Below are positions 47,141 to 47,461 of a stretch of 64,000 nucleotides of DNA, in pieces. Position numbers and translations under genes: made by a program. Origin of the DNA: Macrostomum lignano (lineage: Eukaryota). The stretch lies in the NCBI GenBank assembly GCA_002269645.1, contig NIVC01000206.1:124001-188000 (forward strand). Reading direction: 5' to 3'. The notes beneath the pieces are model-generated. The model did not search any database, was not told the DNA's origin, and saw nothing but the letters and a program-made list of their open reading frames with translations. Numbering within the stretch: the first letter of the stretch is position 1; each line of letters begins with the position of its first letter.

Positions 47141-47274
47141 CTATTCATAGCGTTGCACATCTCAATGACCACAAGCACGCTGAGCGCCATGGTCATGGGC
47201 TTTGGGTGGGAGAATATAGCGCAGTCAATGCCTTCAAAGCGCGACTCCTGCGCGAGGCACTGAGCCTGATGTGT
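47141..47274 (-). CDS. SERCA: SERCA exon 8b (duplicate, putative mutually exclusive exon)
   Basis: 134 nt; acceptor CGTTTCCAG; [45 protein letters not shown]; donor GTAGCA; phase 0 to phase 2. Confidence 0.88.
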
Positions 47275-47327
47275 CTGGAAACGAATGGTGGAGAGGAAAT
47301 TTAATTATCGAGTGTAAAACGCCTCAC

Positions 47328-47461
47328 CTGTTCATTGCGTTGAACATTTCAATGAGCACTAGGACAGACAGGGCCATGGTCATTGGCTTGGGATTGTTGA
47401 ATATCTTGCAGTCGATGCCTGCGAAGTTCTGCTCTTCGGCCAAGCACTGCATGTGGTGCGT
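47328..47461 (-). CDS. SERCA: SERCA exon 8a (L7-8 loop + M8)
   Basis: 134 nt; acceptor CCCTTACAG; [45 protein letters not shown]; donor GTGAGG; phase 0 to phase 2. Confidence 0.92.

What the first reader, a model, noticed from the sequence alone, without database searches (positions are those of the whole stretch)
47141..47461. Tandemly duplicated, putatively mutually exclusive exon pair in SERCA covering the lumenal L7-8 loop and Ca2+-binding helix M8
Seen: two homologous exons, each exactly 134 nt, each phase 0 to phase 2, with AG/GT borders and no stops, separated by only 53 nt (47275-47327). 8a encodes [45 protein letters not shown] and 8b encodes [45 protein letters not shown]. Many codons differ synonymously while both loop cysteines, [12 protein letters not shown] and the M8 glutamate are kept, which suggests selection on both. 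Including both shifts the frame. Established: this segment carries the lumenal disulfide and the site I ligand Glu (E908 in SERCA1a); SERCA splicing I know of is mainly C-terminal; short donor-to-branchpoint spacing and frameshift/NMD are classic mutual-exclusion mechanisms. Inference: one gene makes two pumps with different lumenal loops and M8 (IEMFN vs IEMCN), possibly tissue-specific. The ORF track misses 8b completely.
Basis: partly seen in the sequence, partly recalled or inferred. Interest (0 to 1): 0.85.

Follow-up and report, generated by a model that had tools for sequence, protein, structure and literature searches.

The report
Alternative exon pair in flatworm SERCA
The calcium pump (SERCA) gene of the flatworm Macrostomum lignano carries two interchangeable copies of one exon, so it can build two versions of the pump's inner-facing loop; the pair is real and over 500 million years old, but it already appears as predicted isoforms in many annotated species.

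Summary
The window is Macrostomum lignano, and the gene is SERCA BOX15_Mlig008428g4 on the minus strand, with 11 coding exons. Exon 8a (47461-47328) and a second copy, 8b (47274-47141), are each 134 nt, with AG/GT borders and a 53-nt intron between them. Each encodes SERCA1a residues 871-915: the second half of lumenal loop L7-8 with the C876-C888 disulfide, plus M8 with E908. Including both or neither shifts the frame.

Both copies are under strong purifying selection. Against an old M. lignano paralog that also has both exons, 8a shows 15 synonymous and 1 nonsynonymous change, and 8b shows 19 and 0.

The same a-then-b pair lies in the orthologous gene of monogenean, cestode, trematode, gastropod, cephalopod and annelid genomes. 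Annotated isoform pairs that differ only in this exon exist in 14 species, including nemerteans and a brachiopod. One priapulid and one rotifer locus have a single copy. The pair is therefore an ancient lophotrochozoan mutually exclusive exon pair.

The short intron is not conserved (50 nt to 4 kb), so the frame rule is the only barrier to double inclusion shared by all lineages. I found no paper describing the pair. Tissue use and functional difference remain untested.

The parts
43081..59529 (-). SERCA gene (Macrostomum lignano BOX15_Mlig008428g4), coding part, 11 coding exons
   Evidence: Protein P0216 (PAA88005.1) maps exactly, codon by codon, onto 11 GT-AG-bounded exons. It is 100% identical to the protein stitched from the window.
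48967..49328 (-). Exon 7 (362 nt), M5-M7 region ending ...NYYQL, phase 0 at its 3' end
47462..48966 (-). Intron 7 (1505 nt) upstream of 8a; holds a (GTCT)n microsatellite at 47495-47931 and a 28-nt minisatellite at 48260-48875
   Evidence: No block is conserved with the paralog apart from about 10 nt next to 8a.
47328..47461 (-). Exon 8a (134 nt, a-type, ancestral-like): [44 protein letters not shown](S)
   Evidence: Used in GenBank model P0216. 15 synonymous / 1 nonsynonymous difference to the paralog copy.
47275..47327 (-). 53-nt GT..AG intron between 8a and 8b
   Evidence: Partly alignable with the 66-nt intron of the paralog.
47141..47274 (-). Exon 8b (134 nt, b-type, derived): [44 protein letters not shown](S); not in the GenBank model of this locus
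   Evidence: 19 synonymous / 0 nonsynonymous differences to the paralog copy. Identical in protein to the exon used in paralog model P0218. The donor TAG|gtagca is the weakest in the gene.
45916..47140 (-). Intron downstream of 8b (1225 nt); holds a 42-nt minisatellite at 46449-47070
   Evidence: No conserved block with the paralog.
45798..45915 (-). Exon 9 (118 nt), begins with the C that completes the Ser915 codon, then LSENQSL...

Best explanation
Exons 8a and 8b are a genuine pair of mutually exclusive exons that arose by tandem duplication of one 134-nt exon of the SERCA (P2A Ca2+-ATPase) gene. Each mRNA takes one copy.

**Shown.** Either copy joins exon 7 to exon 9 in frame and supplies residues 871-915 (SERCA1a numbering). 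That segment is the distal half of lumenal loop L7-8 with the Cys876-Cys888 pair, plus transmembrane helix M8 with the site I ligand Glu908. Because 134 = 3n+2, taking both or neither shifts the frame and creates an early stop.

**Inferred.** Frame-shifted transcripts are removed by NMD or give a dead, truncated pump, so only single-inclusion mRNAs count. In flatworms the very short intron (50-78 nt in four of five loci) may also hinder splicing 8a directly to 8b. This cannot be the general mechanism.

**Age.** The duplication dates to the lophotrochozoan stem. The a-copy keeps the ancestral residues (M874, E879; usually P880 and T906, though flatworm a-copies, this one included, have other residues there). 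The b-copy is derived (S/A874, Q879, acidic 880; usually H893 and V906).

**Likely function (inferred).** The pair yields two pumps with the same catalytic core and Ca2+ ligands but different lumenal surfaces between and just after the disulfide cysteines. This would tune lumen-side regulation or E1/E2 kinetics in different cells. Vertebrates achieve comparable tuning with three genes plus C-terminal splicing.
For: **Anatomy and frame**
- establish the exon borders, phases and frame consequences.
- One search gives the position in the protein.

**Selection**
- Against the paralog in L006, 8a shows 15 synonymous / 1 nonsynonymous change and 8b shows 19 / 0, with dS of 1.2-2.0.
- GC3 is 0.77 and 0.70 in the two exons, against a window GC of 0.44.

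**The same a-then-b pair of 134-nt AG/GT exons**

| Locus | Species | Intervening intron |
|---|---|---|
| L006 | M. lignano paralog | 66 nt |
| L002 | Cichlidogyrus | 50 nt |
| L005 | Trichobilharzia | 78 nt |
| L003 | Dibothriocephalus | 146 nt |
| L007 | Capitella | 122 nt |
| L004 | Biomphalaria | 624 nt |
| L001 | Acanthosepion | 4023 nt |

Single copies are found in Priapulus (L008) and Rotaria (L009).

**Common origin**
- Residues 874 and 879 are fixed between a and b in 15/15 species.
- Mean identity is 0.78 for a-a, 0.76 for b-b and 0.68 for a-b.
- The NJ topology separates a from b apart from one cuttlefish sequence.

**Usage**
- Equal-length annotated isoform pairs differ only inside this exon in 14 species: schistosomatids, scallops, Pomacea, Littorina, two nemerteans and Lingula.
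- S. japonicum C1LE79 and Q5DF96 carry the b-type; Pinctada cDNA isoforms carry the a-type.
- The M. lignano GenBank models are RNA-seq-guided (PMC5730564). They use 8a at this locus and 8b at the paralog.
Against: - No junction reads for this locus could be examined. Every GenBank model of this paralog group (Mlig008428.g2/.g4, Mlig013231.g2) uses 8a, and every model of the other group uses 8b. 8b use in this particular gene is therefore inferred from selection, not observed.
- Bootstrap support for a single a/b split is low (about 0.2-0.25), because only 45 positions are available.
- The cuttlefish copies resemble each other unusually closely (dN 0.12).
- The functional difference between the two pumps is wholly inferred.
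- NMD of double-inclusion transcripts in flatworms is assumed.
Confidence: 0.88

Rival explanations
1. Paralog subfunctionalisation. In M. lignano the ancestral alternative splicing has been resolved between gene copies. This gene (the Mlig008428/013231 group) makes only 8a pumps and the Mlig019375 group makes only 8b pumps. On this view 8b in the window is an unused relic.
For: All three GenBank RNA-seq-guided models of this group carry 8a, and both models of the other group carry 8b. The 8b donor here (gtagca) is the weakest in the gene.
Against: An unused exon should decay. Yet 8b here and 8a in the paralog are intact 134-nt AG/GT exons, with 0 and 1 nonsynonymous changes against 19 and 15 synonymous ones. 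A UniProt model of the other paralog (A0A1I8HXM0, P0343) uses its 8a copy. A quantitative bias in exon choice between the paralogs remains quite possible.
Confidence: 0.12
2. Steric hindrance is the operative exclusion mechanism. On this view the 53-nt intron is too short for a spliceosome to assemble on the 8a donor and the 8b branch point together.
For: The intron is 53 nt here and 66, 50 and 78 nt in three other flatworm loci. The only plausible branch-point-like A-rich motif lies about 26 nt from the donor (reading of the sequence). The other introns of this gene are at least 78 nt.
Against: The intron is 122 nt in Capitella, 146 nt in Dibothriocephalus, 624 nt in Biomphalaria and about 4 kb in the cuttlefish, yet the same isoform pairs exist in those lineages. 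A 37-nt constitutive GT-AG intron is removed in the Cichlidogyrus SERCA gene, so flatworm spliceosomes handle shorter introns. At most this is a flatworm-specific reinforcement.
Confidence: 0.3
3. 8b is a neutral or decaying duplicate (pseudo-exon) with no function.
For: It is missing from the GenBank model of this locus and has a weak donor.
Against: dN/dS is 0 over 19 synonymous changes. It is orthologous to b-type exons in at least five phyla, with fixed diagnostic residues. The b-type is present in deposited S. japonicum records that appear cDNA-derived and in annotated isoforms.
Confidence: 0.02

Closest known systems
Tandem-duplicated mutually exclusive exons in ion-transport proteins (e.g. 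CaV1.2 exons 8/8a, SCN alpha exons 5A/5N; general class reviewed in PMC9013439, PMC9741552, PMC5740500)
   Same: Adjacent homologous exons of equal length, exactly one used, ancient, both copies under purifying selection, swapping a transmembrane or loop segment while keeping the rest of the protein.
   Different: The host gene is SERCA, for which I found no such event described. The event is restricted to Lophotrochozoa. Exclusivity is guaranteed by a 3n+2 exon length. I saw no conserved intronic docking or selector structure.
C-terminal alternative splicing of SERCA (vertebrate SERCA1a/b, 2a/b, 3a-f; Artemia, C. elegans, Pinctada isoforms A/B/C)
   Same: One SERCA gene yields pumps with different regulatory properties. 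In SERCA2b the extra lumenal tail acts at the lumenal face near L7-8 (own knowledge).
   Different: Those events replace the C-terminal tail (PMC3527596); the three Pinctada cDNAs all carry the a-type exon. Here an internal segment containing the disulfide loop and a Ca2+-ligand helix is swapped. RefSeq models show each exon type with several of the C-terminal variants.
alpha-tropomyosin exons 2/3 (steric-hindrance MXE)
   Same: Very short distance between the upstream donor and the downstream exon in the flatworm loci.
   Different: The short distance is not conserved outside flatworms, and flatworms splice 37-nt introns. Steric block is unproven here.
coq-2 mutually exclusive exons of helminths, annelids and molluscs (PMC7434440)
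   Same: A lineage-restricted, ancient MXE pair shared by flatworms, annelids and molluscs that changes enzyme properties. I know this paper only from its title and abstract in the search results.
   Different: Different gene and physiology. The coq-2 event has an experimentally shown function; this one does not.

Membership tests
Mutually exclusive exons from tandem exon duplication | Two adjacent exons homologous to each other | tested here: met
   71% nt and 75% aa identity, 53 nt apart
Mutually exclusive exons from tandem exon duplication | Same length and phase; each alone keeps the frame with the flanking exons; canonical splice sites on both | tested here: met
   Both are 134 nt, phase 0 to 2, AG/GT. 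Exon 7+8a+9 and 7+8b+9 are open.
Mutually exclusive exons from tandem exon duplication | Double inclusion or double skipping is non-productive | tested here: met
   Both cases shift the frame and give early stops.
Mutually exclusive exons from tandem exon duplication | Transcripts contain exactly one of the two, and both are used | tested here: inconclusive
   At this locus only an 8a model exists, and 8b is used in the paralog's RNA-seq-guided model. In 14 other species, annotated isoform pairs differ only in this exon. No reads could be mapped with these tools.
Mutually exclusive exons from tandem exon duplication | Both copies under purifying selection / conserved across species | tested here: met
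   15 syn / 1 nonsyn (8a) and 19 syn / 0 nonsyn (8b) against the paralog. The pair is present in seven other genomic loci (six other species plus the paralog).
SERCA (P2A-type Ca2+-ATPase) | Full-length P-type ATPase architecture, phosphorylation motif, closest to solved SERCA structures, Ca2+ site I Glu in M8 | tested here: met
   P0216 carries the Cation_ATPase_N, E1-E2_ATPase, Hydrolase and Cation_ATPase_C domains. CSDKTGTLT is in exon 4. The C-terminal 164 aa hit SERCA1a with E = 4e-72 and align residue for residue; E908 is present in both exons.
Steric-hindrance MXE | Donor-to-branch-point distance too short for splicing of the intervening intron, as a conserved property | tested here: inconclusive
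   The intron is 53 nt here, but 50 nt to 4023 nt across species, and a 37-nt intron is spliced in Cichlidogyrus SERCA. The minimum spliceable intron in M. lignano is not known.
MXE controlled by competing RNA structures (docking/selector) | Conserved complementary intronic elements | tested here: not met
   Between the paralogs only the exons and the short intron align. Folding energy of the exon-pair region does not differ from shuffles (z +0.34 and +0.45). Long-range pairings were not searched exhaustively.
MXE by U2/U12 splice-site incompatibility | One intron of U12 type (AT-AC or /ATCC donors) | tested here: not met
   All donors and acceptors around 8a and 8b are ordinary GT-AG, U2-like.

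The most novel reading that the evidence does not exclude
The b-type exon defines a second, functionally distinct class of SERCA pump. The class would be specific to Lophotrochozoa and maintained for more than 500 million years. Its derived lumenal loop (Q879, acidic 880, usually H893) would give different lumen-side regulation (redox control of the C876-C888 disulfide, or binding of a lumenal or membrane partner) and tissue-specific use. That would parallel what vertebrates achieve with SERCA paralogs and the SERCA2b lumenal tail. In flatworms the roughly 50-nt intron would have evolved as an added steric lock.
Probability: 0.3. Interest if true: 0.65.

Novelty: new member of a known kind. 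Interest (0 to 1): 0.5.

Why it matters
SERCA isoform diversity is described as coming from gene duplication and C-terminal splicing. An internal cassette swap would be different: it exchanges the L7-8 disulfide loop and helix M8, and it is conserved across flatworms, molluscs, annelids, nemerteans and brachiopods. It points to the lumenal face as a long-standing site of functional tuning, and it offers natural chimeras for structure-function work.

It has a practical side as well. Many public gene models mis-join the two exons into proteins of 1049-1080 aa, or omit one, as at this locus. SERCA phylogenies and any isoform-level work on the parasitic-flatworm pumps should take the two forms into account.

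Tried and rejected
- **Loci not on record.** Hymenolepis P0002, Elysia P0197 and Watersipora P0308 could not be fetched, so bryozoans were not tested.
- **Failed scripts.** A Biopython bootstrap timed out and was replaced by my own NJ bootstrap. My exact splice mapper found no chain for P0218 on L006; tblastn was used instead.
- **Conserved intronic regulatory blocks.** A search between the two M. lignano paralogs found none outside the exon pair.
- **Stable local RNA structure.** None found.
- **Literature.** Six searches (SERCA with mutually exclusive exon; mollusc with alternative splicing; exon duplication with Ca2+-ATPase; Schistosoma/SMA2; MXE with Schistosoma and ATPase; MXE with tandem exon duplication and Lophotrochozoa) found no description of this event. 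The scallop muscle paper mentions SERCA only at gene level.
- **The F/C910 idea.** I rejected it as the key functional switch. The paralog's 8a has Leu there, and most b-type exons elsewhere also have Leu.

Full report
**1. What is in the sequence**

The region lies inside a minus-strand gene. Reading the reverse complement shows ...cccttacAG|ACGCACCAC...ATGAACAG|GTgaggcg, then a 53-nt intron ending ...gtttccAG, then ACACATCAG...ATGAATAG|GTagcatt. Exon 8a is therefore 47461-47328 and exon 8b is 47274-47141. Each is 134 nt and open in only one frame.

The copies share 95/134 nt and 33/44 aa. Sixteen codons differ only synonymously and 11 differ nonsynonymously; differences by codon position are 10/8/21.

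The upstream exon ends at 48967 after ...NYYQL. The downstream exon starts at 45915 with the C that completes a Ser codon. Splicing in 8a alone or 8b alone gives a continuous SERCA sequence. Splicing in both gives a stop 27 codons into 8b, and skipping both also shifts the frame.

**2. Whose gene it is**

A 993-aa protein stitched from the window's exons is 100% identical to GenBank PAA88005.1, BOX15_Mlig008428g4 of the free-living flatworm Macrostomum lignano (P0216). That protein maps codon by codon onto 11 GT-AG exons between 59529 and 43081, and 8a is coding exon 8. The deposited model skips 8b, which lies inside its intron 8.

The Mlig_3_7 GenBank annotation was derived from a genome-guided RNA-seq transcriptome assembly (PMC5730564). 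The C-terminal 164 residues align without gaps to rabbit SERCA1a (E = 4e-72). This places the alternative exon at residues 871-915. C876 and C888 (the L7-8 lumenal disulfide) and E908 (Ca2+ site I) are kept in both copies.

**3. Are both copies functional?**

M. lignano has an older paralog, BOX15_Mlig019375g6 (P0218), 94% identical in protein. Its locus (L006) contains the same arrangement: 8a' at 10018-10151, a 66-nt intron, and 8b' at 10218-10351.

| Exon | Synonymous changes | Nonsynonymous changes | dS |
|---|---|---|---|
| 8a vs 8a' | 15 | 1 | 1.2 |
| 8b vs 8b' | 19 | 0 | 2.0 |

All four exons keep AG/GT borders and the 134-nt length. With synonymous sites near saturation, gene conversion cannot explain the protein identity. 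Both copies have been under strong purifying selection in both genes. Both exons also have coding-like GC3 (0.77 and 0.70) against a window GC of 0.44.

The paralog's GenBank model uses 8b', and a UniProt model of the same paralog (A0A1I8HXM0) uses 8a'. All three GenBank models of the window's paralog group use 8a. 8b-containing mRNA is thus documented in the species, but not at this locus.

**4. The pair is old and widespread**

tblastn of the two peptides against fetched loci of orthologous genes found an a-type exon followed by a b-type exon in each of the species below. Every exon is 134 nt with AG/GT borders, except the Dibothriocephalus a-copy, which is interrupted by an assembly gap.

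| Species | Group | Intervening intron |
|---|---|---|
| Cichlidogyrus casuarinus | Monogenea | 50 nt |
| Trichobilharzia regenti | Trematoda | 78 nt |
| Dibothriocephalus latus | Cestoda | 146 nt |
| Capitella teleta | Annelida | 122 nt |
| Biomphalaria glabrata | Gastropoda | 624 nt |
| Acanthosepion pharaonis | Cephalopoda | 4023 nt |

The Priapulus caudatus and Rotaria loci have a single copy.

Among public proteins, 14 species have annotated isoform pairs of equal length that differ only inside these 45 residues. They are four schistosomatid genera, three scallops, Pomacea (two pairs), Littorina, the nemerteans Tubulanus and Lineus, and the brachiopod Lingula. S. japonicum C1LE79 and Q5DF96 carry the b-type; I recall that both derive from cDNA clones. 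The three published Pinctada fucata cDNA isoforms all carry the a-type and differ only at the C-terminus.

Across 15 species pairs, residue 874 is always Met in a and Ser/Ala in b. Residue 879 is always Glu in a and Gln in b. Residue 880 is Pro/His/Lys/Glu in a and Glu/Asp in b. Mean identity is 0.78 for a-a, 0.76 for b-b and 0.68 for a-b. An NJ tree separates a from b except for one cuttlefish sequence, though bootstrap support is low with only 45 sites.

The a-type resembles the single exon of outgroups (Priapulus PNEPENF, usually T906), so b is the derived copy. The most economical reading is one duplication in the lophotrochozoan stem. Its timing relative to Gnathifera rests on the single rotifer locus examined. 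It has been retained in Platyhelminthes, Mollusca, Annelida, Nemertea and Brachiopoda.

**5. How exclusivity is achieved**

The one feature shared by all lineages is the 3n+2 length, so only single inclusion is productive. This part is shown. That aberrant forms are cleared by NMD is inferred.

It does not fit the annelid, the gastropod or the cephalopod. A 37-nt constitutive intron is removed in the same gene of Cichlidogyrus. I therefore rate it as a possible flatworm-specific reinforcement only.

I found no support for a competing-RNA-structure mechanism. Between the paralogs only the exons and the short intron align. The exon-pair region folds no better than shuffled sequence (z +0.34 and +0.45). 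All splice sites are ordinary GT-AG. The 8b donor (gtagca here, gtgggg in the paralog) is weaker than the 8a donor (gtgagg in both), which would suit regulated use of 8b. That last point is inference.

**6. What it probably does**

The catalytic core, the disulfide cysteines, [12 protein letters not shown] and E908/N911 are identical. The differences that hold across phyla lie between and just after the two cysteines (874, 879-882, 889, 892-893), plus residue 906 in M8.

From general knowledge of SERCA, L7-8 is the site of redox control of the lumenal disulfide. In SERCA2b it is the docking area of the lumenal tail. A changed lumenal surface plausibly alters lumen-side regulation or transport kinetics. 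This is inference; nothing here measures it. Tissue specificity is also untested.

**7. Comparison with what is known, and novelty**

Mutually exclusive tandem-duplicated exons are a well-known class (PMC9013439, PMC9741552, PMC5740500; seen in the search results). The SERCA literature I could search describes gene duplication and C-terminal splicing only, including for invertebrates (PMC3527596). Six searches found no description of an internal MXE. That is an absence in the searchable library, not proof.

The event is, however, already implicit in RefSeq and ENA isoform records of many species. I therefore class it as a new member of a known kind. It is real, ancient and apparently undescribed in print, but it is neither mechanistically new nor unknown to the databases.

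A by-product is a list of faulty public models that fuse part of the a-exon to the b-exon in frame:
- M. lignano A0A1I8JJ10, A0A1I8JIN5 and A0A1I8HT55
- Echinococcus multilocularis and E. granulosus
- Taenia solium and T. asiatica
- S. margrebowiei VDO47648.1 (retains the whole pair)
- Mytilus coruscus CAC5382030.1
- Batillaria
- Acanthosepion

**8. Verdict**

Interest is moderate at 0.5.

Noticed in passing
window 39745-41433, 41996-42551, 46449-47070, 47495-47931, 48260-48875, 49487-50110, 50568-51089, 51883-52316, 53272-55566, 56372-56649, 58044-59159, 61005-63054: Almost every intron of the SERCA gene, and the flanking DNA, holds a long micro- or minisatellite array (periods 4-59 nt, up to 105 copies). 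These arrays produce the very long spurious ORFs in the ORF list. This fits the reported 15% simple and tandem repeat content of the M. lignano genome (PMC5730564).
   Followed up: partly
window 44255-44416 (minus strand): Reading through the exon 10 donor (ACG|gtgagt) continues the frame for 14 mostly hydrophobic residues (…KFTDGELLIGFLHLWFFT*). This could be an intron-retention alternative C-terminus, like the short …DDYPNFF tails annotated in molluscs, or it could be chance.
   Followed up: no
public proteins P0217, P0341, P0344 (M. lignano), P0225, P0423-P0425 (Echinococcus, Taenia), P0371 (S. margrebowiei), P0348 (Mytilus coruscus), P0251 (Batillaria), P0001 (Acanthosepion): Gene models of 1049-1080 aa (or fragments) join a truncated a-exon in frame to the b-exon, or retain both. 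They create a false internal repeat in the L7-8/M8 region.
   Followed up: partly
L001 16127-16260 and 20284-20417 (Acanthosepion pharaonis): The cuttlefish a and b exons are much closer to each other (dN 0.12, dS 1.4; identical from residue 895 on, differing at one residue of 888-894) than a and b are in other species. This suggests partial gene conversion between the copies in cephalopods.
   Followed up: no
L008 6613-6839 (Priapulus caudatus): In Priapulus the homologous segment is fused to the upstream exon, with no intron at the ...YFQL|THH... position, while the donor after ...NALN(S) is at the conserved place. The upstream intron was either lost there or gained in other lineages.
   Followed up: no
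proteins P0043, P0044, P0152 (labelled Klebsiella pneumoniae), P0213 (Clostridioides difficile), P0136 (Trichophyton violaceum): Animal-type SERCA fragments are deposited under bacterial or fungal organism names. This is almost certainly host or sample contamination in those assemblies.
   Followed up: no
proteins P0133, P0033 (Schistosoma), P0199 (Cichlidogyrus): The second flatworm SERCA paralog (THHLQCQLEPSLF... / THHLQCSANKVAF...) appears with a single exon type in the proteins seen. Whether that gene also has a duplicated exon was not examined.
   Followed up: no
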